Shown: one piece after another, positions 1-53,423 of the stretch
Layout: every line of letters starts with the position of its first letter
Position numbering within the stretch: the stretch's first letter is position 1
DNA from: Phaeosaccion multiseriatum
Lineage: Eukaryota > Protista > Ochrophyta, other classes
Assembly (NCBI GenBank): GCA_965112735.1
Contig: OZ218954.1
Coordinates: 3,906,001-3,970,000, forward strand
Length of the DNA: 64,000 nucleotides
Reading direction: 5' to 3'
Program-made: the position numbers and the translations under genes
The notes under the pieces: generated by a model
Told to the model about the DNA's origin: nothing
What the model saw: only the letters and a program-made list of their open reading frames with translations
Database searches by the model: none

Positions 1-1656
1 GGCGCCGAGAAAGACGCCGCAGTAGCAGCGGCGGGCGGTGATTCAACAGCAGCAGCGGCCGATGGCAACGCTCAGAGCACCACCGAAGAGAAGGGCAAGG
101 CCCCGGGAGGGAAGGACACCGCAGCAGCTGCAGCAGTTGGTGATACAGCAGCAGCAGCGGCAGCAGCGGCGGGTGCCGACGAGTCTGTATCACCAACTGC
201 CGCGGATCCCCCCCTGCCCCACGGCCAGCGCTTGTTGCTCTGCTCTGGTGAGCTGTACGTGGTGCAGCGCCTCTTTGGGCTGCTTGTGGAGCGCCTCGGT
301 CGCGCTGCTTACCTGTGCGACGAACTTGCGATGGACGAGGCGAGGAGGGTCAGCGAGTCCAAGGGAGACGCAGGAGGAGACGCAAGCGCCGCGGCAAAGA
401 AAGCGGCAAAAGCAGCGGCAGTTGGTGATACAGCGGCCGCGGCCGGTGGCGAGGCGGCGACTGCTACTGCTGGAGGAGCTCTGAACGGACACGCGGAGGC
501 TGCGGAGAAGGGCGGCAAAGGAGGCGCCCCTGAGGGAGGCAGTGCCGCTGCTGAAGGGAAGGAGGAAGACGCGGCAGGTGCGGCAGTTGGTGCTACCGAC
601 AAGGCCGAGCTTCCCTACGAGTGCTTCCTGGCGCTGCTGTATGGCTGGATCAGCGGCTCGGTGTCCACAGAGAGGTACGAGGAGGGCTCGCGGCAGCTCA
701 TGGGTAACCAGGGCTACGTGTGCTTCACCATGGACGCCGTTGTCGCCAACCTGTTGAAGAACGCGCATGTGGCGGCGGAGAGTGAGGTTTCGGGGGCCCT
801 TGTGCAGCTGTATCGGTACCACGCTGCGCAGAATCGGGACGGAATGCGCCCCAAGCAGTACCTCAAGGAATGCAAGGAGCTTCTCAAGGGCAGGGAGGGG
901 GAGGGGCTGGAGATGTTCCGAGTGCAAATTTACCCGGGGGGGGATCCCGGGGGGGCAGTCAAGGAGGAGGCGAAGGAGGGGAAAGCGAAGGAAGCGAAGA
1001 TGCTCGTGGAGGTGTTGGGCGATCTGTGGAAGGAGGAGAAGGAGGAGAAGGAGGCAGAGGCAAAGGAGAAGGAGGAGGAGGCCAAGGAGGAGGAGGAGGG
1101 CGAGGAGGAGGGCGAAAAGGCGAAGAAGGTCAAGGAGGAGGAAGAGGGACATGGAGCCGGCGAGGGGGAGGAGGAGGGCGAGGAGCACAAGGCCAACAAG
1201 GCGGCGGAGGAGGAAGAGAGTAGTAGCAAGCAGCGCGACAGTGCGGAGGCGGAGGGGACGGCAGCAGACGGCGATGCTATGGACACCGCTGGGGATGGGC
1301 CAGCGGGCGAGGGTGCTGAGGAGGGGGGCGACGTAGACACCGCAGAGGCGGCAGAGGCCACCTCAGAAGGTGCAGCAGCAGCAGCAGCAGGGGGCGGGGG
1401 AGGGAGCAAGAGTCGGAAGCGGCCCATGAGCGCAAGCGGAGGAGACTCTGACGGGCGGGCAGGGGCAGGCGGGGCAGCAGCAGATGAGGCCGCGGGGGAG
1501 AAGGAGGGAGGCGCCTCGGGCTCGGGGACAGCAGGGACGGGTGCTGAGGAGGAGGCGGGGGGGGCAGCAGCGGGCACGGCAGGGGGTGATGCAGAGGATG
1601 CCGGAGAGGGCGAGGGGGAAGAGGGCGGAGAGCCGGCCAAGAAGAAGAGACGGTGA
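1..1656 (+). CDS. SIN3: 3' terminal exon of a Sin3-like paired amphipathic helix transcriptional corepressor (Sin3 C-terminal domain plus acidic tail); 5' end outside the window
   Basis: Frame 1 is open from base 1 to TGA at 1654-1656. Motifs LYVVQRLFGLLVERL and YECFLALLYGWISGSVSTERYEEGSRQLMGNQGYVCFTMDAVV match the Sin3 C-terminal domain pattern. Ends in an NLS-like PAKKKRR. Confidence 0.8.
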   Translation, partial: GAEKDAAVAAAGGDSTAAAADGNAQSTTEEKGKAPGGKDTAAAAAVGDTAAAAAAAAGADESVSPTAADPPLPHGQRLLLCSGELYVVQRLFGLLVERLGRAAYLCDELAMDEARRVSESKGDAGGDASAAAKKAAKAAAVGDTAAAAGGEAATATAGGALNGHAEAAEKGGKGGAPEGGSAAAEGKEEDAAGAAVGATDKAELPYECFLALLYGWISGSVSTERYEEGSRQLMGNQGYVCFTMDAVVANLLKNAHVAAESEVSGALVQLYRYHAAQNRDGMRPKQYLKECKELLKGREGEGLEMFRVQIYPGGDPGGAVKEEAKEGKAKEAKMLVEVLGDLWKEEKEEKEAEAKEKEEEAKEEEEGEEEGEKAKKVKEEEEGHGAGEGEEEGEEHKANKAAEEEESSSKQRDSAEAEGTAADGDAMDTAGDGPAGEGAEEGGDVDTAEAAEATSEGAAAAAAGGGGGSKSRKRPMSASGGDSDGRAGAGGAAADEAAGEKEGGASGSGTAGTGAEEEAGGAAAGTAGGDAEDAGEGEGEEGGEPAKKKRR

Positions 1657-2394: not shown

Positions 2395-2552
2395 ACGCGG
2401 AGGCTGCGGAGAAGGGCGGCAAAGGAGGCGCCCCTGAGGGAGGCAGTGCCGCTGCTGTGAAGGGAAGGACAGAAAGACGACGCAGCAGGTACGGCAGTTG
2501 GTGCTACGGACAAGGCCGAGCTTCCCTACGAGTGCTTCCTGGCGCTGCTGTA
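2395..2552 (+). pseudogene. Degenerate duplicated fragment of the Sin3 exon (copy of 491-641)
   Basis: acgcggaggctgcggagaagggcggcaaagg...gagtgcttcctggcgctgctgta matches 491-641 with small indels and substitutions. Confidence 0.9.
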
Positions 2553-2716
2553 GTGTCAACTCTTGTATTTCATGTATCGACATTGTACCTCGATCTTGTG
2601 CGTCGATACAGTGCCCGGTCACAAATGTCTAATTAAGTGACGCCATCGTGCGAAGGGACCAAATGTTTTCATTCGTGGTCTACAGTACACCGTGGTCAAC
2701 GCGGGTTCAAAACGTG

Positions 2717-5700
2717 TCAAGATTCAGGGACCGTTTCGGAAGATTCAGGGGCCGCTGACGTAGGGCTGCACAACATACTGCAGAAGGCGGCGCGGATGCT
2801 GTCGATCGTGTCTGACCTCTTGACGGAGTCTATCGAAGCATCAAGAGCTGCGGGTAGCAAAATCAAGCACTCGTTTGAGTATAGATTGAAGCTGCAGAGC
2901 AAACGATACTCAACAGCGAACACCCACGGCATCCATGCGCGCCATCCTGTCGGCTTCTTCTCCTGTATCACATGCACCTGACGCAACAAACATCGAACAT
3001 GAGTGGAAGAGCGGTTTCATGTACGATTGTAGGGACGATACTGATCGAAGCCCAAGCACGAAAACACTTGCAGGATGCCCCGGGTGCGGCTACGGCTACC
3101 CAGCTAAGCTCATGTCTTCGAACATTCGCTACTTGCTTCTTGTGCCATTCAGAGCATTCGAGGCAAGAATACATGTGCTGGGAGGCTGGGTACTTCGGCT
3201 GAAAACGCCCCATAAGTGTCACAGTCAGGGTCAGGGCGGGGTCGCGATAGGTTGGGTTGGGTTGCTTAGGTCAGGGTCACGGTTGGGTCAGGGCACGGTT
3301 AGGGTCAGGGTCACGGTTAGGGTCAGGATATGAGATGACAAGATCTTACCATGTTTGACGTATCTTTGTCGGGATGTAAACTGGTCGTACCGCCTTTATT
3401 CGGCTCGCTTGATTTTAAGACGCAACAACCAGCTTTGGACAGTGAATCCCACGTTCTTGCATACTTCCAATTCCCGTGGACCGCCAGCCCTACCCCTTTA
3501 AGCTTGGCCGACCCGTCCACCCCAGATGAATTCGTCTGAGTGGTCTGCACTGTTGGCCGCTCCGAAAAGAACGCCGCATCTTCCTACTCAGCAACATTTG
3601 CAGTCGGAGTGTTAGCAAAGATTCAAAGACTCAGGGGAATTGATGGCAACTATACTACTGGCTGACTTACCCCCGATACGTTGCCCAGCCAAATTTGATC
3701 CTTGTACTCCGTCACCGTGTGCCCCAATATGTTGGTGGCTTTGCTGCCGAACCAGACCTTACTCTTTCCTTTAAAGAAATATTGTTCTTTGTCAATCGCC
3801 TCAGCGACTGCAACTGCGCAAAAATGGGGTACGCCCACCACAGCCAGCATCATCCATGTAGGCTCGTCCTCCTCGGCTTCCAATTGAGCAAAGCTTACGT
3901 CGATGGTACAGCTGTCATCACATGGTGTCCAAGACTGTGTCTCCTCTCCCTCCGACATGAAGGCCGCAAACCGCTTTCCTCTTCCAAACATATCGCCCTC
4001 GTCCTCCTCTATTTCCTTCTTCAGTTCATCATTGGTAACCATCAGAGGAAAACAAAGCTTTGCGGTAGGCTCAAAGACGATCCCAGAAGGGCCGCTCACT
4101 GCGGTTGAAACCAGCCACTGCATATCGGGGTGCTCCTCGTCGAATGCCAAACCCAGCTTGAAGTCTGCCGAGAAGCTACGCTCGTCAATTATGTCGGTCG
4201 TGGAGCCCTCCTCCGTGTTAATCCGAAGGAAGTCGCATGCATTCGAAGTGTACGTGTACGGCCCGTTCCCTTCCCCCGAGCGTGTGAAGGATGACATGAT
4301 GGTCTTGGCTTCATTCATGGGTTCTTCTGTGCCTGAGAAGCAACAAGGGATTCAAAAATTGCCACAGGGTGAGGAGCTGTCATGTGCCTCATTGGCACAC
4401 ATCTGAGCAAGAAGGGATTTGGTGAGGCGCTTTTGGACCCTCATAAAGGAATGCATAAATCTAGACATCGGGTCCATGACCCACCACAGCCAAGTGCCAA
4501 GGCTGTCGCCTATGAGGCTGCACTGAGGCTGAGGACTAAAGTTGCTGCACCCCCACCACCCCGCCCTCCCATCATGCTCCCCACCCTCACCTTCAGCAAC
4601 GTCGGTCACGGTCTCCTCAATAGCCCTGGGGCTATAAACATACAAGGCAAGGAGAGTGACGAGAATGATTTTCAGAACTCGGGCCGTTATCACCAGCCAT
4701 GCCTCCTCCGTCGCTACTCAAGCTCACCTCTCTGGCTCCGATTCGGAGATGAACGTCTTCGCCGTGTTAGTACTGTCCGGGTCACGGTGTATGTCCCACA
4801 TGTCCGCCTCCCACTCACCAGTGAACTTGTTTCTACTAAAGACATCTATGGACAACTTTGTCCCTTTTCCGACCTGTGGCGGAACGCCCCCTGTAGATGG
4901 GAAGGAAGTCCTTAGGGCACACTAACATCAAGCCCAAGGAACGTGAGCGCGGACCACTTACCGGTGAACTGGTTGTCGGAGAGGTGCAGTAAATGAAGGT
5001 TCCGCAGACCTCCAAGCTCGGCTGGAATGGTCCCTGCGGATGGGAGGAAAGTTCTTTGGTCACACAAACATGAAGTCAAAGGGACGCGAACGGGTACGCG
5101 TACCACTTACCAGTGAGAATGTTGTTGTGGAGGAGCAAATGCCGAAGCTTCTCCAGACTTTCAAGCTCCCTTGGAATGCTCCCTGCGGTGAGGGAAGTTC
5201 TTTGTCATACGACTATCAAGCGAAAGTTACGCGAACGGGTGTGCGTACCACTTACCAGTGAGCTTGTTGTCGGATAGGTTCAAAACCTCAAGCTTCTCCA
5301 GACTGCCAAGCTCCGATGGAATGCTCCCTGCGGAGCCGAGGGAAATTCTTTGGTCACACAAAATATCAGGTGGAAGGGACGCGAACGGGTGTGCGTACCA
5401 CCTACCTACAAGGTCCTGACGCGAAAAATCGAGCTTGGTCAGATGGGTCTGGGTGTTGATGTCTTCAGGGAGACTGAGGCTGTTACCACGGAACCTGTAA
5501 TCCGTGATGTTGATCCCCAATCGCCCGATGAGGGCAGCGGGAATAGGACCTGTGTATCGGAGGGAACATGTTGGGTTATACACAAATCTAGAGTGAAAGG
5601 GACGCGAACGGGTACGCGTACCACTTACCAGTGAGAATGTTGTTGTGGAGGAGCAAACGCTTAAGCTTCAGACTTCCAAGCTCGGGTGGAATGCTCCCTG

Positions 5701-7676
5701 CGGGGCGGAGGGAAGTTCTTTGTCATACGACTATCAAGCGAAAGCGAGGCGAACGGGTGTGCGTACCACTTACCGCTGAGCTTGTTGTCGGAGAGGCTCA
5801 AAGCCTTAAGCTTCTCCAGACTTCCAAGCTCTGGTGGAATGCTCCCTGCGGGGCGGAGGGAAGTTCTTTGTCATGCAACTATCAAGCGAAAATACGCACG
5901 CGGGTACGCGTACTACCTACATTCTAGATTGTTGTGGTCGAGCCGTAGTACTTTAAGGTTTGCAAGCTGTCTTAGTTGCGGCGGAATACTCCCTGAGGTG
6001 TGGGGAAAGTTCTTCAGCCATACGAATATCAAGTCAAGAGGACGTGACCGGGTGTGCGTACCACTCACCAGTGAGCATATTGTTGTTCAAAAACAGTCTC
6101 TTAAGGTTCTGAAGACCTGCAAGCTCGGGTGGAATGCTCCCTGCGGATGGGAGGAAAGTTCTTTAGTTCATGCTCATATCAAGTTAAAGGGACGCGAACG
6201 GGTTCGCGTACTACCTACCTTCTAGATTGTTCTCGTCGAGCAGTAGTTCTTGAAGGTTTGAAAGCTTTGCAAGTTGCGGCGGAATACTCCCTGAGATGGG
6301 GGGAAAGTTCTTCAGCCATACGAATATCAAGTCAAGAGGACGTGAACGGGTATACGTACCACCTACCTACAAGGTCCTGACGGGACAAAGCGAGCTTGGT
6401 CAGATGGGTCTGGGTGTTGATGTCTTCAGGGAGAGTGAGGCTGTTATCACAGAAATAGTAACGCGTGATTGTGATCCCCAATCGCCCGATGAGGGCAGCG
6501 GGAATAGGACCTGTGTATCGGAGGGAGGTTCTTCGGTCATACACAAGATCTAGAGTGAAAGGGACGCGAACGGGGTTCGCGTACCACTTACCAGTGAGCT
6601 TGTTGTCGGATAGGTTTAAAACCTCCAGCTTCTCCAAACTTCCAAGCTCCCTTGGAATAATCCCTGCGGAGCGGAGGGAAGTTCTTTGTCACACGACTAG
6701 CAAGCGAGACGGACGCGAACAGGTACGCGTACCACTTACCAGTGAGCTTGTTTAAGGCGAGGCTCAAAACCTCAAGCTTCTCCAAACTTCCAAGCTCCCT
6801 TGGAATGCTCCCTGCGGAGTGGAGGAGAGTTCTTTGGTCATACTCATATCAAGCGAAAGGGACGCGAACGGGAACGCATACCACCTACCTTCTAGATTGT
6901 CTGAGGCGAGCCATAGTTTTTGAAGGTTTGACAGCTGTCCAAGTTGCGGTGGAATGCTCCCTGAGATGGGGAAAGTTCTTCAGCCATACTAATATCAAGT
7001 CAAGGGGACGCGAACGGGTGTGCGTACCACCCACCTTCTAGATTGTTCCATGCGAGCTGCAGATCTTGAAGGTTTGAAAGCTCTCCAAGTTGCGGCGGAA
7101 TGCTCCCTGAGATGTGGGGAAAGTTCTTCAGCCATACTCATATCAAGTCAAGAGGACGCGACCAGGTACGCGTACCACTTACCAGTGAGCTTGTTTAAGG
7201 CGAGGCTCAAAACCTCAAGCTTCTCCAAACTTCCAAGCTCCCTTGGAATGCTCCCTGCGGATCGGAGGGAAGTTCTTTGTCACACGACTATCAAGCCAAA
7301 GGGACGGCAACTCCGCTTCTTTCTGGGCCACTTCCCCATCGATGAGGTTGTTCCTTTCATCTCTAAGTCCATGATTCGCCACGCCACAGTACCTATCTGA
7401 AGGCACAGGGTTCGTGCAACACGCGCGCTACGCGCAAGGGTGGGGGACCAATCTTCACCCCAGCCCCAACCTCCACGGGACCTTCTTACCTTCGAGTCCG
7501 TTCCGAGGCAGCTCGAGACGCACCACATACCCTTTCTCGTCTACGGTCACTCCATGCCACTGGTCCAAAGGTTGTTCGGTGTTCCATCCCCCGCTTTCAT
7601 TCCACCCGTCTCCGTTTGTGGCCAAGAAGAAGACCCTAAGTACTGCACGCTGCTGCGTCTCTACTTCCTCCATCAC
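2717..7676 (-). CDS. Multi-exon LRR protein: N-cap exon, 16 LRR cassette exons, ZU5-like domain with HFC motif, unknown C-terminal domain
   Basis: Exon 7676-7490 (RAVLRVFFLATNGDGWNESGGWNTEQPLDQWHGVTVDEKGYVVRLELPRNGLEG) is a typical stramenopile LRR N-cap. AG/GT-bounded phase-1 LRR exons: 7254-7183, 7106-7035, 6960-6889, 6811-6740, 6663-6592, 6510-6367 (144 bp), 6290-6219, 6140-6069, 5992-5921, 5845-5774, 5697-5629 (69 bp), 5549-5406 (144 bp), 5327-5256, 5182-5111, 5033-4962, 4890-~4728. Consensus GSIPxELGxLxxLxxLxLxxNxLTG. Frame continues through ~4630-4590, 4332-3671, ~3583-3350, ~3198-3130 and 2978-2717; the 3' exons are less certain. Confidence 0.8.
3224..3327 (+). repeat. Degenerate telomere-like hexamer array (GGTCAG/GGTTAG/GGTCAC) inside an intron
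   Basis: gtcagggtcagggc...ggttagggtcagggtcacggttagggtcagg; a similar array sits at 19630-19672. Confidence 0.7.
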
Positions 7677-8918
7677 TCTTGCTGGTATGTATATGCGCGT
7701 CTTTGATCCTCAATAATTTATTCCGTCGTCGGATTCTAGGTGATGTCGTCTGTCGTCGGGTGTCTTCGATCTTCGATTTAAGGAGTGCAGCGCAGATGCT
7801 TCGTTATGGGCCTTCCCTGTGAGAGGCGGGGGGAGAAAGGGTAAGGCACCGGCTTTAACGATGGAGACGGAAGGAGAAGGGATACACCAGGGGCAGGTGC
7901 ATGGCATGGGGGGGGGGGGGAAAGGGATTGTACTGCTTGTACCCGCAGCATTTATTTAGAGACTTGTCAGCGAGTTCTCTCTTTGTCTGACGTCTTCCCT
8001 CCTTCCCCTTCCCCCCCGCCCTCAGATAAGCAGACGCTCTCTGCATGCCAGACGTCATGAGGGACTTCACGGACAATCAAGGTGACCACGGACACGCCCT
8101 TGACTAATGCACGTGCTTGTGATGGGTGGCAGGGCGCGCTGCCAGCGGCACAGCTCAGGCTCTTCGCATTCCTGCAGCTCTGATCGAGTGCGAGTGGTGG
8201 TTTTAAGGAGCGGCTCAGTTGCGGAGAGGACGGGAAGGAGGCTCTCTCTGATGGCATCGACCATCACCATCTCTTGCACGTATTCATCTTCCCCCACACC
8301 TCCTCTTACGCCTCTCCCTCCCTTCCTCCCCTCCCCTCTCCTCCCCTCCCCTCTCCCCCCCTCCCCTCCCCTCCTCCCCTCCCTCCCCTCCCGTCCCCTC
8401 ATCTCTCTCCCCTCTCCTCCCTCCCTCCCCTCCCCTCCCCTCCCTTCTCTTCCTTCCTCTTCACACCGATGAGAACAGTTCGACATCCGACAGAACGCCC
8501 CGGGGTGCAAGCAGCACCAGCTGTCCCTCCAAGAGAAAGTCTAGCTACTCCTGGGCACTGTGTCGTCAACCAAACCAACCCCCACCTCCACTACGTGGGT
8601 GGAGAGTGACCCTTCCTCCGCTGCTGTGACCAGCGCAAGCCCCTTGCTTCTAAGCATGTACATTGTCGCTCTCTTCTGTCCACGCGAGTACCGCCGTGAG
8701 GGCTTGCACATCACAGACATGCCCCCCCCCCGAGTTGGTGCGGCAGTGAGAGAGATACTCTGCAGCTCCAAACAACAGCCAAGGTGCGCTAAGTGGCGGT
8801 GGGGGTAGGAGTGGGGGTGGTGGTGGAGGAGGTGGAGATACGCTTACCACTCAAAGGTGAGGTCGTGGTCTGAGAGGTCTAGAGTCCCAAGGTTCTACAG
8901 CGCTCCCAGCGAGGCAGG

Positions 8919-9160
8919 GTGGAATGTTCCCTGGAATGTTCCCTGCCTGGAATGTTCCCTGCGGATGGGGGGGGGAGTTCTTTGGTCACCCGGATACCAA
9001 TTCAAAGGGACGCGAACGGGTTCGCGTAACCACTTACCTTTTAGATTGTTCTCGTCGAGCAGCAGTTCTTGAAGGTTTGAAAGCTGTCCAAGTTGCGGCG
9101 GAGTACTCAGGGGGGAACTCTTTAGCCATACAAATACCGAGCCAAGGGGACGCGAACGGG
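8919..9160 (-). pseudogene. Orphan LRR exon/intron units upstream of the LRR gene start
   Basis: 9108-9038 encodes STPPQLGQLSNLQELLLDENNLKG with an intact GTAAG donor but a damaged acceptor. It is flanked by the gggacgcgaacggg intron motif. 8919-8962 holds a triplicated exon start (ggaatgttccct x3). Confidence 0.8.
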
Positions 9161-9480
9161 TCGCTGGACTACCGCAGCTGACGATTGGCTGGCCAGCTGG
9201 TCGACCGATAGCAGATCAAGGCCGGCTGATGTCGGTGGTAACAGGTAGCACGTTGGCGAACGCCGGCGGTAGCAGGTAGCACGTTGGCTGACACCGGTGG
9301 TAGCAGGTAGCAGGTAGCATGCCAGAGGGAAAAAAAAGAGAGTCGATTAGCCACTGCAGTTGGTCTGACCACCAGACGTGATTGAGCTAGCCTCCTAGTC
9401 CATTTCTGGTGTCAGCCGGCGCGATATGGACCAGCCATGGCCAGCAGCGTCAGCCGGCATGCTATCAGCCAGCTATATGC
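9161..9480. mobile_element. Possible transposon-end remnant with short internal repeats
   Basis: Repeated ggtagcaggtagcacgttggc and many ggccagc/gctggc palindromic words. Begins exactly where the LRR intron motif is cut off. Confidence 0.3.
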
Positions 9481-48600: not shown

Positions 48601-51600
48601 GGTGCACTCCTGTGTTGTCCCTCGGGTTTTGGTTGGCTCAACTTTAGCATCCGTGATCCTTGCCCGGCAGACGATAGTCTCCTCCTCTCAGGCATGTACT
48701 GATTCCGTGGTGCCTTTTCTTGCTGTGCCTCTGACTGGTAACGCATGCCTCCATCATACTGCCATTGTCTGCTCTCCCGCTGTCCGGCATCGTTTCTCCC
48801 TCAGGCCCCAACCACTGTCGCTCCAACCACCATCCCTCCGACCCCCGCGCCCTCGACATCAACTCCGACTAATGCTCCGACCACGGTAAGTGACATGACG
48901 CGGTGCACTCCTGTACTGTCCCTCGGGCTTTGGTTGGCTCCACTTTAGCATCTGTGATCCTTGCCCGGCAGACGATAGTCTCCTCCTCTCAGGCATGTAT
49001 TCATTCCATGGTACCTTCTCTTGCTGTGTATCTGACTAGTAGCGCATGCATCCATCATACTGCCGTTGTCTGCCCTCCCACTGTCTGGCATCGTCTCTCC
49101 CTCAGGCCCCAACCACTGTCGCTCCAACCACCACCCCTCCGACCCCCGCGCCCTCGACATCAACTCCGACTGATGCTCCGACCACGGTAAGTGACATGAC
49201 GCGGTGCACTCCTGTGTTGTCCCTCGGGCTTTGGTTGGCTCCACTTTAGCATCTGTGATCCTTGCCCGGCAGACGATATGTCTCCTCCTCTCAGGCATGT
49301 ATTCATTCCGTGGTGCCTTTTTTTGCTGTGCCTCTGACTGGTATTGCGTGCATCCATCATACTGCCATCGTCTGCTCTCCCGCTGTCCGGCATCGGCTCT
49401 CCTTCAGGCCCCAACCACCGTCGCTCCAACCACCATCCCTCCCACCCCCGCGCCCTCGACATCAGCTCCGACGGATGCTCCGACCACGGTAAGTGACATG
49501 ACGCGGTGCACTCCTCTGTTGACTCTTGGGGGCTTTGGTTGGCTCCTCTTTAGCATCTGTGATCCTTGCCCGCAGACGATGTCTCCTCCTCTCAGGCATG
49601 CATTCATTCCGTGGTACCTCATCTTGCTGTGCCTCTGACTGGTAACGCTTCCTTCCTATTACTCCCATCGTCTGCTCTCCCGCTGTCCGGCATCGTCTCT
49701 CCCTCAGGCCCCAACCACTGTCGCTCCAACCACCACCCCTCCGACCCCCGCGCCCTCGACATCAACTCCGACTGATGCTCCGACCACGGTAAGTGATATG
49801 ACGCGCTGTCCCTCGGATTTTGGTTTCCTCCAATGATGTGCCCTCGCAGGTACTTGGCAATCACGCTCCTGAAGCTCACGTCGCACACACGCCCACTCCC
49901 TGCTTTCTGTTCTGTTTTTTGTTTGTTCTGCTCGCATTCGCTTTCGCATTCGCATTCGTTCTCTGTCCATCCCCTCCCTCAGCCGGTGGCGGTTACCCCC
50001 CGTGTCACGGTCCCTTTTGAGGCCACCATCCAAAGCCTCGTCGTACCCCTCCGACACGCTCGCAGACGCCGTCTTGCCGCCGGAGACGAGGCGGACTCCG
50101 CACTCAGTGCGCAAGTGCTCAGCATTATCGTCGCCGCTGTGGACTTTGTCGCTCGTACTACCGTCTCCAATAGCGCTTCCGCCTCCGGCGTTGTGGAGGG
50201 CTCCTTCTCCATGATTGAGCTGCCGGACGAGGACGAGAACGTCGTCTCCTACGCCACATCTGCCACCACCTTCTACGACGTTACAGCAGAGGAGGAGCTA
50301 GACACCGAGGCTTTTGCCACGCTCGTGTCAGCGGCCGCACGCACGGCTGTGGAGGGAATTATTGCTACGTTAGCCAACCTCGACATCATCGACGGCGTCG
50401 AAGAGCCCCCTACAGACACCGCCTCTCCTGCGTCGACACCGACCACCGTGCCTTCAACCCCAGCTCTGACGTGTGTAAGTAGCCGTCAATGTCCATCAGG
50501 CCTCTTCTGCGTGGAGGGGATGTGCAGCGAGTGTCTCGTGGAGGGAGCGGAGTGCTCCGCATCCTCCTACAGCACCTCAGCTTGCTGCGGTAACGTCGCC
50601 TTCTCCGATGTTGGAGCTAGCGGCTTCTGCATCGACCAGGAGGACGACAGCACCGCTGCCACCCCCTTCACTGGCATATGCTCGCCGAGGTACGCTGTTG
50701 AGGGGGAGCGCTGCGCGGGAGATGTCTTGGATCGGTACGGGAGCTCCTGTGGCAGTGGTCTGGTCTGCACCGAGGGAAGATGCACTCAAGGAGGGGCGGT
50801 GGGGGAGCCCTGCTCGGAAGGGGGTGCCGCAAGCTCCTGTGGGAGTGACCTCCGCTGTGTGAAAGCCACGTGTACTGCCAAAGCAGTGGAGGGGGATGAG
50901 TGCTTCGATGGTCTCACTTGCGGCAGTGGCCTCATCTGCTCTTGGGGCAAGTGCACCCTCCCAAGCGCAGCGGGTGAGCGCTGCTCGCCGTTTAGCGCTC
51001 CGTATAGAACGGTGGGGCACAACAGCGCTTGCGGACCAGACCTGTACTGTGCGGACGGGATCTGCGGCGCGTGCGTCGAGAATGGAGGGCAATGCTCGGT
51101 TAGCCCCACGGGCTGGTACTCGTCCGTGTGCTGTGGTGACGTGACCGAGGGACAGGGCGCGGGTGGCTTCTGCATCGCCGGGGTGTGCTCATCGACGTAT
51201 ACTCAGGAGGGGGAGCCCTGCGAGGGGATTGACGACCAGAATTCCTGCAGCGGTGACCTCGTCTGCGTCGAGGGCAGTTGCATTGCCCCAGGAGGTGATG
51301 GAGCGGACTGCCAGGGAGACCTCACCAGCAACACGTGCGGGCGAGGGCTACACTGTGTGGAGGGGACCTGCACGGCCTGCATCGAGAATGGAGCACAGTG
51401 CTTGACTGAGACTTGGGCCAACTCAGCTTGCTGTGGCGATGTGTCCCCCTCTGGAGCGGGTGGCTTCTGTCTTTACGAGGAAGGCGCGTCCCGCATTAGC
51501 GAGCCACCCTTTATGGGCACTTGCTCATCTACATTCGGTGGGCTGGGAGACTCCTGCCTAGCAGCTGAGTTCGAAGGAAATGAGTCGTTGAGTTCCTGTG

Positions 51601-53423
51601 GCGGTGATCTGGTCTGTATCGAAGGGACATGCCGCGCGTGCATCGAGGAGGGAGCGGAGTGCTCGGCAAACTTGTTCAGCAGCTCAGCTTGCTGTGGCGA
51701 AGGAGCCTCTCCGGGCTTTTGCATCGACGAGGACAATCCCACGTCTGGCCGAAGCACCTACAGCTTTACCAGTAGTACCCCCGCCTTCTTCACTGGCATA
51801 TGCTCGTCGAGGCCTGGTCAGGACGGGGAGAGCTGCGCAGGAGGTGTGGGCGTCAACTCCTGTGCCCCAGGCCTCTTCTGCATCGAAGGCACCTGCAGCG
51901 GCTGCCTTATGGAGGGGGCACAGTGCTCCACATCTACCTCAGGCGACTTGCGCGACACCATTTGCTGTAGCAATGTTGCCCACCCGTTACCCTTCGCGGG
52001 TGGCTTGTGCATCAAAATGGACGATGAGGACACCGGCAACGGGCTTGAGACACCCACAGGCAACGGGTTTTGGGCAGATGTAGGCACTTGCTCTCCGACC
52101 TTTGGTCAGGAGGGTGAACGCTGTATGACAAACTCTGATGATGGAGACTCCTGTGGCCTCGGACTCTTCTGCATCGAGGGTACGTGCAGCGAACCTGGAG
52201 GTGCCGGTGACTCTTGCGTAACCACCTTCGACGGAGACTCCTGTGCCCCAGGCTTCTTCTGTAACGAGAGGACGTGCAGCGAGTGCCTCATGGAGGGAGC
52301 GGAGTGCGCAGCATCCTTCTACACCATCTCAGCTTGCTGTGGTGACGTGAGCTCCGTTGGAGCTGGTGGCTTCTGTATCTCGGGCAGTTGCTCAGCAAGT
52401 CGTGGCCAAGAAGGGGAGAGCTGCGCGGGAAGTGTGGAAAACAGCTCCTGTGCCTCGGGCCTCTTGTGCGTGGAGGGTAGCTGCGCTGCACCAGGAGGTA
52501 TTGGTGAGAAGTGCGACGGGCCCGAACTTGACCCCTTTCTCAATTCGTGCGAGGGAGTACTCCTCTGTATCGAGGGGACGTGCAGCGAGTGCCTCGTGGA
52601 GGGGACGGAGTGCTCAGCATCCTTCTACAGCGAATCAGCTTGCTGTGGTGACGTGAGCCCCCTTGGAGGTGGCGGCTTCTGCATTGGCGACGACGACTTT
52701 GGCACATCCACCACCCCCTCCTCCACAAGCACTTGCTTGGCGAGTCGTGGCCAAAACGGGGAGCGCTGCTCGGCAGATGGAGATGACAGTTTCAACAGCT
52801 CCTGTGTCGAAGGCCTCTTTTGCGTGGAGGGCAGCTGCGCTGGACCAGGAGGTATTGGCGACAGGTGCGATGGGCCCGAATTTGATGCCACTATCAACAC
52901 GTGCGAGGAAGGCCTCTTTTGCGTGGAGCGTAGCTGCGCTGCACCAGGAGGTATTGGTGAGAAGTGCGAGGGGCCCGAACTTAATGCCCTTCGCAATTCG
53001 TGCGAGGGAGTACTCCTCTGTATCGAGGGGACGTGCAGCGAGTGCCTCGTGGAGGGGGCGGAGTGCTCGGCATCCTTCTACACCAACTCAGCTTGCTGTG
53101 GTGACGTGAGCCCCCTTGGAGGTGGCGGCTTCTGCATCGGCGACGACGACTTTAGCACATCCACCGCCCCCTCCTCCACAAGCACTTGCTCGGCGAGTCG
53201 TGGCCAAAACGGGGAGCGCTGCTCGGCAGATGGAGATGACAGTTTCAACAGCTCCTGTGTCGAAGGCCTCTTTTGCGTGGAGGGCAGCTGCGCTGGACCA
53301 GGAGGTATTGGCGACAGGTGCGATGGGCCCGGATTTGGGCCCGACCTTGACCCCACTCTCAATACATGCGAGGGAGTACTCCTCTGCATCGAGGGGACGT
53401 GCCTGAGCCTTTTTTCTGAGTGA
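45666..53423 (+). CDS. Very large secreted protein G: signal peptide, ERAL, three C..DP.C..GIGCNAxGxGxECRFCxF..(F)..CP modules, ~8 PT exons, long Cys-rich repeat exon
   Basis: Exon 45666-45719 MRSFVGALLLSSSGFVFQ; exons from 46025, 46354, 46792 and 47248 carry the CRFCGF modules. 81-nt APTTVAPTTxPPTPAPSTxTPTDAPTT exons at 47.6-49.8 kb. Final exon 49983-53423 has many GExC...SCxxGLxCxEGxC and CxxEGAECS...SACCG...GGFCI repeats. Confidence 0.82.

What the first reader, a model, noticed from the sequence alone, without database searches (positions are those of the whole stretch)
3671..7676. PIDD-like LRR-ZU5 receptor with a candidate Cys autoproteolysis site
Seen: the LRR array splices in frame into exon 4332-3671, containing FTRSG...LRINTEEG...LVSTAVSGPSGIVFEPTAKLCFP...SW...VGVPHFCAVAV (HFC at 3826-3818). 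Established: ZU5 domains have the pattern (L/V)SPxVxCGPxGxxFxxPVxLxxP; animal PIDD1 (LRR-ZU5-ZU5-UPA-DD) and Nup98 self-cleave at H-F-S. Exon-shuffled LRR genes known from brown algae are mostly LRR-ROCO; no Roc/COR or kinase domain is visible here. Inference: a cytosolic (no signal peptide or clear TM) self-processing, diversifying immune-type receptor class in a stramenopile, with Cys as nucleophile.
Basis: partly seen in the sequence, partly recalled or inferred. Interest (0 to 1): 0.85.

Follow-up and report, generated by a model that had tools for sequence, protein, structure and literature searches.

The report
Cassette-LRR gene with possible ZU5-like tail
A brown-alga-type gene built from one-repeat-per-exon LRR cassettes very probably continues into a 220-codon exon with no detectable relatives; that exon resembles the self-cutting ZU5 domain of animal immune and cell-death sensors only in short motifs and in a protein-language-model comparison, so the idea is worth testing but is unproven.

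Summary
On the minus strand an N-terminal cap exon (7673-7490) is followed by 16 LRR exons with canonical GT-AG introns of one phase. Three alternative splice paths all join the array in frame to exon 4332-3671. The quoted motifs are present, and H-F-C lies at 3826-3818.

The ZU5 interpretation is only partly supported.
- **Against:** Pfam finds no ZU5, FIIND or Peptidase_S59/S68 match in the whole exon or six sub-fragments. PDB sequences give nothing. phmmer against 1.84 billion representatives gives only a repeat artefact. Two single-sequence AlphaFold models are unusable (pLDDT 30-33), so the fold is untested.
- **For:** the nearest named ESM-Atlas clusters are ZU5 (30 of 100, top score 0.90), then FIIND, UNC5B and DTHD1. 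Four ZU5-like motifs are collinear. HF[STC] between hydrophobic flanks is rare in shuffles.

No RNA evidence was obtainable, because the four runs found are DNA. No UPA, Death, Roc/COR or kinase domain follows. Two hydrophobic segments weaken the claim of "no TM".

The scan had already noted this LRR array (s1-331466) and another LRR-"ZU5" gene elsewhere in the genome (s1-331315). Both notes are unchecked.

Verdict: a real cassette-LRR gene with an orphan tail. I put ZU5-like at about 40-50% and self-cleavage at about 15-20%.

The parts
7490..7673 (-). Exon 1: start codon and LRR N-terminal cap (MEEVETQQRAVLRVFFLATNGDGW...WHGVTVDEKGYVVRLELPRNGLE)
   Evidence: ORF and donor G|gtaaga. There is an in-frame stop 12 codons upstream. 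Pfam gives a weak LRR_10 hit, E 0.089.
4962..7254 (-). Fifteen LRR cassette exons: 7254-7183, 7106-7035, 6960-6889, 6811-6740, 6663-6592, 6510-6367, 6290-6219, 6140-6069, 5992-5921, 5845-5774, 5697-5629, 5549-5406, 5327-5256, 5182-5111, 5033-4962
   Evidence: Canonical phase-1 GT-AG sites and an open frame throughout. Consensus is GSIPxELGxLxxLxxLxLxxNxLT. Introns are 71-81 nt and 65-90% identical. DNA-run depth is 20-60 times the single-copy level.
4728..4890 (-). Last, diverged LRR exon (core 4890-4819), with a possible coding extension to 4728 that forms a hydrophilic linker (GEWEADMWDIHRDPDSTNTAKTFISESEPE)
   Evidence: Donors occur after 4819 (G|gtgagt, phase 1) and after 4728 (AG|gtgagc, phase 2). 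The extension has GC3 of 0.77.
4591..4713 (-). Linker exon: either the mini-exon 4631-4591 (PRAIEETVTDVAE), or the longer alternative 4713-4591, which adds the TM-like ATEEAWLVITARVLKIILVTLLALYVY
   Evidence: Phases are compatible with the neighbouring exons. Kyte-Doolittle 19-residue mean is 2.2. No RNA evidence is available to choose between the two.
3671..4332 (-). Large exon encoding the 220-residue orphan domain that is the ZU5-like candidate
   Evidence: Good acceptor and donor, and coding-type GC periodicity. No Pfam, PDB or phmmer relatives. Language-model neighbours are ZU5/FIIND/UNC5B/DTHD1. DNA depth is single-copy.
4046..4114 (-). Motif LVSTAVSGPSGIVFEPTAKLCFP, resembling the central ZU5 motif S-P-x-V-x-C-G-P-x-G-x-x-F-x-x-P-V-x-L-x-x-P
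   Evidence: Read directly from the sequence. The comparison motif is from memory, not a tool result.
3794..3856 (-). Hydrophobic segment WMMLAVVGVPHFCAVAVAEAI, containing H-F-C at 3826-3818. The candidate scissile bond F|C lies between 3821 and 3820.
   Evidence: Coordinates. Kyte-Doolittle maximum is 1.94. Shuffle test. The low-confidence AlphaFold model places a beta hairpin here with HFC at the start of the last strand.
3350..3583 (-). Candidate last coding exon (78 codons to donor ATG|gtaaga, or 86 codons to the stop at 3325-3323). Status uncertain.
   Evidence: Acceptor gagtag|GAA in phase 0 and an open frame. GC by codon position is flat, 0.48/0.52/0.53. No Pfam hit. Language-model neighbours are beta-pore-forming toxin families, but recognition is low.

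Best explanation
This is one gene of the brown-alga cassette-LRR kind.

**Structure (shown at sequence level)**
- An N-terminal cap and about 18 LRRs, each 24-residue repeat on its own 72-nt phase-1 exon, form a ligand-binding solenoid.
- A short linker may, in one splice form, include a membrane-spanning segment.
- The linker joins the solenoid to a lineage-restricted, strand-rich domain of about 165 residues, encoded by exon 4332-3671.

**Inferred: what the domain is**
- It is a highly diverged member of the ZU5 superfamily (ZU5/FIIND-like beta sandwich).
- A 35-residue acidic insertion interrupts it.
- It ends in H-F-C just before a long hydrophobic strand. This is the position of the HF|S site of PIDD1 and the SF|S site of NLRP1/CARD8.

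**Inferred, and less likely: how it works**
- The Cys thiol attacks the Phe carbonyl (N-to-S acyl shift) and the thioester is hydrolysed.
- This leaves the LRR-ZU5 part and a C-terminal fragment of roughly 50-135 residues non-covalently associated.
- An event sensed by the LRRs then frees or destroys one part.

**My odds:** single gene about 0.7; ZU5-like fold about 0.4-0.5 overall; actual self-cleavage about 0.15-0.2.
For: **Gene model**
- Sixteen consecutive LRR exons have canonical same-phase splice sites and an unbroken frame.
- Three in-frame routes lead into 4332-3671.
- Only about 400 bp on the same strand separate the last LRR exon from the big exon.
- The terminal LRR cassette is diverged (58-65% identity to the others), as expected for a fixed junction to a downstream domain.
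- The big exon has coding-type GC periodicity.

**ZU5 likeness**
- In the ESM-Atlas feature search of residues 12-180, the three best named clusters are ZU5 (0.90, 0.89, 0.88).
- 30 of the 100 best named hits are ZU5. Seven more are FIIND, and UNC5B ZU5-UPA and DTHD1 also appear.
- The unfiltered search of the whole exon also brought up ZU5.
- Four ZU5-like motifs are collinear: LRINTEEG...D-I-I; LVSTAVSGPSGIVFEPTAKLCFP...QSW...; VGVPHFCAVAV.
- HF[STC] with flanks this hydrophobic occurs in 0.012% of shuffles.

**Literature**
- The cleavage motif of ZU5/FIIND sits at the C-terminal end of ZU5, just before a long strand, with a buried Phe. Ser, Thr or Cys can serve as nucleophile in this class of reaction (PMC3210808).
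- ZU5-superfamily autopeptidases are also described in bacteria, as thiol autopeptidases (PMC3482391).
Against: - No profile or sequence support. Pfam ZU5, FIIND, UPA, Death and Peptidase_S59 are all silent at E<=10 on the exon and six sub-fragments. The PDB sequence search is empty at E<=10.
- phmmer against 1.84 billion representatives returns only a repetitive plant Rx_N artefact.
- Atlas scores of 0.8-0.9 with about 107 shared features lie in the range that chance hits or distant relatives also reach, by the tool's own calibration.
- No usable structure. pLDDT is 30-33 and Foldseek returns noise.
- The IPPGA-type N-terminal ZU5 motif is poor.
- No conserved His lies 25-45 residues upstream of the site, unlike CARD8 His-252 and His-270.
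- No UPA or Death-fold domain follows.
- The HFC segment is the most hydrophobic stretch of the protein. It could simply be a buried strand or a membrane segment.
- No RNA evidence links the exons.
Confidence: 0.4

Rival explanations
1. The gene is a cassette-LRR protein whose C-terminal exon encodes a fast-evolving, lineage-specific domain unrelated to ZU5. The Ala/Val-rich segment WMMLAVVGVPHFCAVAVAEAI is a membrane anchor or an ordinary buried strand. It is preceded by an acidic run and followed by K-rich sequence. H-F-C is a chance tripeptide. The protein would act like the C-terminally anchored LRR-ROCO proteins of Ectocarpus, but without a GTPase, as a membrane-tethered LRR scaffold or decoy.
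For: - No ZU5 hit by any profile or sequence method.
- No homologues at all.
- The segment has the highest hydropathy of the protein, Kyte-Doolittle 1.94.
- HF[STC] alone occurs in 3.7% of shuffles.
- Zambounis et al. report many Ectocarpus LRR proteins with no other recognisable domain, and ROCO proteins with C-terminal TM anchors (PMC3341825).
- An unchecked scan note calls the other 'ZU5' gene of this genome membrane-anchored (s1-331315).
Against: - The coherent ZU5/FIIND/UNC5B/DTHD1 neighbourhood in the language-model search would have to be coincidence or driven by local motifs.
- Pro and His in the middle of a 21-residue Ala/Val-rich segment are unfavourable for a membrane helix. This rests on established hydrophobicity scales and was not computed with a dedicated predictor here.
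- Both low-confidence AlphaFold models make strands here, not a helix.
Confidence: 0.35
2. The LRR array and exon 4332-3671 are not one functional protein. One possibility is that the LRR gene ends at the stop reached by reading through the donor after 4728 (…SEPER*), and a separate small gene starts at ATG 4318 (MNEAK…, 222 aa). The other is that the big ORF is an untranscribed or decaying remnant.
For: - An in-frame ATG lies four codons into the exon, and the ORF 4318-3650 is self-contained.
- Read-through of donor 4728 stops at once.
- No RNA data could be obtained.
- No homologue shows conservation of the exon.
- Decayed cassettes lie nearby, at 9190-8870.
Against: - Three independent splice routes keep the frame, with strong donor and acceptor sites.
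- Only about 400 bp separate the two on the same strand, which is short for a terminator plus promoter.
- The exon shows clear coding GC periodicity and an intact 220-codon frame.
- The whole 17-exon LRR frame is intact, which argues for a live gene.
Confidence: 0.2

Closest known systems
PIDD1 (animal LRR-ZU5-ZU5-UPA-Death domain protein, self-cleaving at two HF|S sites)
   Same: N-terminal LRRs are followed by a candidate ZU5-like module. That module ends in H-F-(nucleophile) immediately before a hydrophobic strand. There is no signal peptide.
   Different: - No Pfam ZU5 match.
- One candidate module, not two.
- No UPA or Death domain detected.
- Cys in place of Ser.
- The LRRs are 24-residue plant-type repeats on individual shuffled exons.
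- There is no detectable sequence homology, so any relationship would be very remote or convergent.
FIIND (ZU5-UPA) of NLRP1 and CARD8, self-cleaving at SF|S (PMC3210808)
   Same: FIIND clusters are among the language-model neighbours. The LRR-then-autoprocessing-module order matches NLRP1. The Phe-nucleophile dipeptide sits at the end of the ZU5-like part.
   Different: - No NACHT or CARD domain.
- No conserved upstream His or Glu equivalents could be identified.
- The C-terminal fragment is short and of unknown fold.
- There is no Pfam FIIND hit.
Brown-alga LRR-ROCO candidate immune receptors with exon-shuffled LRRs (Zambounis et al. 2012, PMC3341825; PMC11378527)
   Same: One LRR per 72-nt exon, a single intron phase, homogenised short introns, cassette classes shared across the genome, a cytosolic N-terminal cap, and a possible membrane anchor.
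   Different: No Roc or COR GTPase domains. The C-terminal effector position is taken by an orphan domain.
Bacterial ZU5-superfamily releasing autopeptidases of polymorphic toxins (Zhang et al. 2012, PMC3482391)
   Same: A thiol (Cys) autopeptidase version of the ZU5 superfamily that works as a self-cutting release module next to repeat arrays.
   Different: - Those are secreted bacterial proteins with RHS repeats and toxin tips.
- No sequence link to them was found here; phmmer over bacterial proteomes was empty.

Membership tests
ZU5 domain (Pfam PF00791) / ZU5 superfamily | Significant match to the family profile | tested here: not met
   hmmscan against Pfam-A at E<=10 on the whole exon and six sub-fragments gave no ZU5, FIIND, UPA or Peptidase_S59 hit. 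phmmer against PDB chains at E<=10 gave none.
ZU5 domain (Pfam PF00791) / ZU5 superfamily | Two-layer beta-sandwich fold of about 110-150 residues | tested here: inconclusive
   Two single-sequence AlphaFold2 runs gave pLDDT 30.3 and 33.1. Foldseek on such a model returns noise. No homologues were available to build an alignment.
ZU5 domain (Pfam PF00791) / ZU5 superfamily | Resemblance to family members by an alignment-free method | tested here: met
   ESM-Atlas features: the top three named clusters are ZU5 (0.90-0.88). 30 of 100 hits are ZU5, plus FIIND, UNC5B and DTHD1. By the tool's own calibration this is a lead, not proof.
Self-cleaving ZU5/FIIND (PIDD1, NLRP1, CARD8) | x-F-(Ser/Thr/Cys) motif at the C-terminal end of the ZU5 part, just before a long beta strand | tested here: met
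   H-F-C lies at 3826-3818, followed by AVAVAEAI and preceded by MLAVVGVP. It is rare in shuffles. Its position relative to a fold is only inferred.
Self-cleaving ZU5/FIIND (PIDD1, NLRP1, CARD8) | Demonstrated autoproteolysis that depends on the nucleophile | not testable with these tools
   This needs expression of wild type against Cys-to-Ala protein.
PIDD-like architecture (LRR-ZU5-ZU5-UPA-DD) | Second ZU5, UPA and Death domain C-terminal to the first ZU5 | tested here: not met
   No Pfam hit in the rest of the exon, in candidate exon 20 or in any downstream ORF of 75 aa or more as far as the neighbouring Sin3-like gene. Only about 50-135 residues follow H-F-C.
Brown-alga exon-cassette LRR genes | One LRR per 72-nt exon, all introns in one phase, short mutually similar introns, cassettes repeated across the genome | tested here: met
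   Depth in DNA runs is 20-60 times single copy. This matches the description in PMC3341825 and PMC11378527.
ROCO GTPases | Roc and COR domains after the LRRs | tested here: not met
   No Roc, COR or kinase hit in any exon or ORF between 4890 and 1860.

The most novel reading that the evidence does not exclude
A brown-alga 'cleave-and-release' immune sensor. Shuffled LRR cassettes would sense a pathogen. A cryptic ZU5/FIIND-like module cuts itself at HF|C through a thioester. The freed C-terminal fragment of about 130 residues would then be a membrane-inserting beta-hairpin effector. Its candidate last exon is nearest, by language-model features, to MACPF, aerolysin, ETX-MTX2 and leukocidin pore formers. 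This would be an NLRP1-plus-gasdermin logic invented independently, or inherited anciently, outside animals.
Probability: 0.06. Interest if true: 0.9.

Novelty: new variant of a known kind. Interest (0 to 1): 0.5.

Why it matters
[quoted passage not shown] No signalling or death-fold module of the animal type has been tied to their shuffled LRR arrays.

If the C-terminal exon is truly a ZU5/FIIND-type self-processing module, three things would follow:
- A new receptor class would be added to an independently multicellular lineage.
- The ZU5 superfamily would extend to stramenopiles. A full-text search found no paper that holds both 'ZU5' and 'brown alga', and none of the 15 listed papers in a wider search with Ectocarpus, Phaeophyceae and stramenopile terms mentioned ZU5.
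- There would be a direct, testable handle (HF|C) on how these receptors signal.

If it is not, the locus is still a clean example of the shared LRR cassette pool being attached to a non-ROCO, orphan effector domain.

Tried and rejected
1. **RNA evidence.** The look-up of sequencing runs returned four runs of one sample. Read laying showed an unspliced contig across 2523-5060 with flat depth, so these are DNA. The joints seen inside the LRR region are assembly collapses between cassettes, not splicing. No read-laying run was left afterwards.
2. **Homologues.** phmmer against 1.84 billion representatives gave one hit, P0001, at E 5e-39. It is a 3237-residue tandem Rx_N coiled-coil protein whose score is the sum of 23 weak repeat matches, so I rejected it as an artefact. 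The word-index search at E<=10 gave none. The JGI metagenome peptide scan gave none. A cassette-intron DNA pattern in metagenomes gave none.
3. **Controls for how well this lineage is represented in the protein collection.** I used the Sin3-like exon and a 1196-codon ORF. Both came back empty because candidate lists were cut at 8000. The orphan status of the exon is therefore weak evidence of true restriction.
4. **Structure.** Two single-sequence AlphaFold2 jobs were unusable. Foldseek against the PDB on the second model had its best E at 0.16 and TM below 0.25, which is meaningless.
5. **Building a ZU5 profile for hhalign.** No tool supplied ZU5 sequences. I did not type sequences from memory, and I did not feed AlphaFold a ZU5 alignment, because that would be circular.
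6. **DUF3806.** The Pfam hits (E 0.08-0.2, below the cutoff) fall on the acidic insertion, so I rejected them as noise.
7. **Paralogues in the window.** tblastn found none.
8. **Earlier scan notes.** The search by sequence was blank.

Full report
**1. What is in the sequence**

On the minus strand a start codon at 7673 opens a 61-codon exon (7673-7490). An in-frame stop lies 12 codons upstream. The exon encodes the usual cap of brown-alga LRR proteins (…GDGW…WHGVTVDEKGYVVRLELPRNGLE). It has a weak Pfam LRR_10 hit and no signal-peptide-like N-terminus.

Sixteen LRR exons follow:
- Thirteen are 72 nt, one is 69 nt, and two are 144-nt double repeats.
- Every one is bounded by cag|G … G|gtaagt-type sites in the same phase, and the frame is open throughout.
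- Introns are 71-81 nt and 65-90% identical to one another.
- Two exons (7254-7183 and 6811-6740) are identical.
- Two cassette classes are visible, …NKLT and …NNLE.
- The last cassette (4890-4819) is the most diverged.

In four public DNA runs of the organism, the cassette region has 20-60 times the depth of the flanks, while 2523-5060 is one flat, single-copy contig. The cassettes therefore belong to a genome-wide family. The exon discussed below has no near-identical copy.

This is the architecture described for Ectocarpus LRR-ROCO genes (PMC3341825, PMC11378527). The scan had already noted it for this stretch (s1-331466).

**2. The join to exon 4332-3671**

The exon has a strong acceptor (ttgttgcttctcag|GC) and donor (GGG|gtaagt). 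It enters in phase 1 and leaves in phase 0. Three routes from the array keep the frame:

| Route | Path | Product |
|---|---|---|
| A | Last LRR exon extended to 4728 (extension GC3 0.77), then the 41-nt exon 4631-4591 | Hydrophilic linker |
| B | Donor after 4819 straight to 4332 | No linker |
| C | Donor after 4819 to an acceptor before 4713, giving exon 4713-4591 | Adds ATEEAWLVITARVLKIILVTLLALYVY (Kyte-Doolittle 2.2), a possible membrane span |

The 220-codon exon has the GC periodicity of coding DNA (0.52/0.42/0.63, against 0.56/0.34/0.57 for the LRR exons).

I could not obtain RNA evidence. The only runs that hold the stretch are genomic. The fusion is therefore shown by sequence logic only, and I put it at about 0.7.

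Downstream there is a candidate 78-86-codon exon (3583-3350, or to the stop at 3325-3323). Its coding signal is flat. If the 3671 donor is not used, the protein ends six codons later.

**3. The ZU5 question**

All quoted motifs are present, and H-F-C is at 3826-3818.

Profile and sequence methods give nothing:
- Pfam finds no ZU5, FIIND, UPA, Death or Peptidase_S59 at E<=10, on the exon or on six sub-fragments.
- The PDB sequence search finds nothing.
- phmmer over 1.84 billion representatives finds only a tandem Rx_N artefact.
- The word-index search and two metagenome scans find nothing.

Two control queries from the same window were also blank. The collection may simply lack this lineage, so 'orphan' should be read cautiously.

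Without homologues, AlphaFold2 failed (pLDDT 30.3 and 33.1). Foldseek on the model is noise.

The positive evidence has three parts.

(a) The ESM-Atlas feature search:
- For residues 12-180, the three best named clusters are ZU5 (0.90, 0.89, 0.88).
- 30 of the 100 best are ZU5 and seven are FIIND. UNC5B ZU5-UPA and DTHD1 also appear.
- ZU5 was also the first named family in the unfiltered search.
- By the tool's calibration these scores and about 107 shared features are compatible with a distant relative, but also with chance.
All the neighbouring families share the ZU5 fold.

(b) Four ZU5-like motifs are collinear with plausible spacing. A 35-residue acidic insertion (4033-3932) interrupts them.

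(c) H-F-C is followed by a hydrophobic strand-like run. This is the arrangement described for HF|S in PIDD and Nup98 and for SF|S in CARD8 and NLRP1 (PMC3210808). HF[STC] occurs in 3.7% of shuffles. With such flanks it occurs in 0.012%, though that is a post-hoc criterion.

A Cys nucleophile is chemically ordinary for N-to-O or N-to-S acyl-shift autoprocessing (PMC3210808). Zhang et al. describe the ZU5 superfamily as a thiol autopeptidase in bacteria (PMC3482391).

**4. What argues otherwise**

- The H-F-C segment (WMMLAVVGVPHFCAVAVAEAI) is the most hydrophobic stretch of the protein (Kyte-Doolittle 1.94). An acidic run precedes it and Lys-rich sequence follows. It could be a membrane anchor or simply a core strand. 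The central Pro and His argue against a helix.
- There is no upstream His or Glu equivalent to the residues needed in CARD8.
- No UPA or Death domain follows.
- Only one ZU5-like unit is present. 'PIDD-like' is therefore too strong.

**5. Mechanism, with odds**

- Most likely (0.4): an LRR sensor whose C-terminal module is a diverged ZU5-superfamily domain.
- Self-cleavage at F|C is a further inference (about 0.15-0.2 overall).
- Rival 1 (0.35): an unrelated orphan domain with a hydrophobic anchor.
- Rival 2 (0.2): separate or dead transcription units.

A speculative extension comes from candidate exon 20. Its language-model neighbours are beta-pore-forming toxin families (MACPF, leukocidin, ETX/MTX2, aerolysin), but recognition is low. 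If the exon is real, the fragment released by cleavage could be a membrane-active effector. I give this about 0.06.

**6. Novelty and score**

- The LRR array is of a known kind.
- An LRR cassette array attached to a non-ROCO, ZU5-like tail would be a new variant.
- No paper in the library holds both 'ZU5' and 'brown alga'. None of the 15 listed papers in a wider search with Ectocarpus, Phaeophyceae and stramenopile terms mentioned ZU5.
- Another first-stage note reports a second LRR-'ZU5' gene in this genome (s1-331315 and s1-331427). It is unchecked, but it is the obvious source of the alignment needed to settle the fold.

Noticed in passing
window 8870-9190 (minus strand): Two decayed LRR cassettes lie 1.2-1.5 kb upstream of the gene's start. 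One has lost its AG acceptor. The other carries in-frame TAG codons and a triplicated GGAACATTCCA. They look like orphan remnants of cassette turnover.
   Followed up: partly
window 4632-4713 (minus strand): An in-frame alternative exon part encodes ATEEAWLVITARVLKIILVTLLALYVY (Kyte-Doolittle 2.2). It is reachable from the donor after 4819. The skipped segment contains TACTAAC about 50 nt upstream of the acceptor. Soluble and membrane-anchored isoforms are therefore possible.
   Followed up: partly
window 3350-3583 (minus strand): Candidate last exon, rich in Ser, Thr and Gly with alternating polar and hydrophobic stretches. Its nearest language-model neighbours are beta-pore-forming toxin families (MACPF, leukocidin, ETX/MTX2, aerolysin), but recognition is low, there is no Pfam hit, and the GC periodicity is flat.
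   Followed up: partly
window 3230-3340 (minus strand): An imperfect minisatellite (GACCCTAACCGTGACCCTGACCC…) lies directly after the candidate last exon. DNA-run depth is somewhat raised at 3150-3349.
   Followed up: no
window 4950-7350: In four DNA runs of the organism the cassette region has 20-60 times the depth of the single-copy flanks, with many chimeric contig joints between cassettes. The cassette family is highly repeated genome-wide and collapses in short-read assembly.
   Followed up: partly
window 232-1656 (plus strand): Last exon of a Sin3-like gene (Pfam Sin3a_C, E 6e-14) with a long Glu/Lys/Gly/Ala-rich tail. It is convergent with the LRR gene, so the two 3' ends must lie between about 1700 and 3300.
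   Followed up: partly
window 49833-53423 (plus strand): A 1196-codon ORF with repeated Cys-rich units (C..G L.C..G.C pattern) after a hydrophobic N-terminus. It has no Pfam hit and no homologue by word-index search. It may be a lineage-specific secreted repeat protein.
   Followed up: partly
window 5921-5992 and 5629-5697 (minus strand): Two cassettes carry in-frame oddities. The donor of 5992-5921 is T|gt, which turns the conserved junction Gly into Trp. Exon 5697-5629 has a 3-nt deletion (69 nt). Both keep the frame.
   Followed up: no
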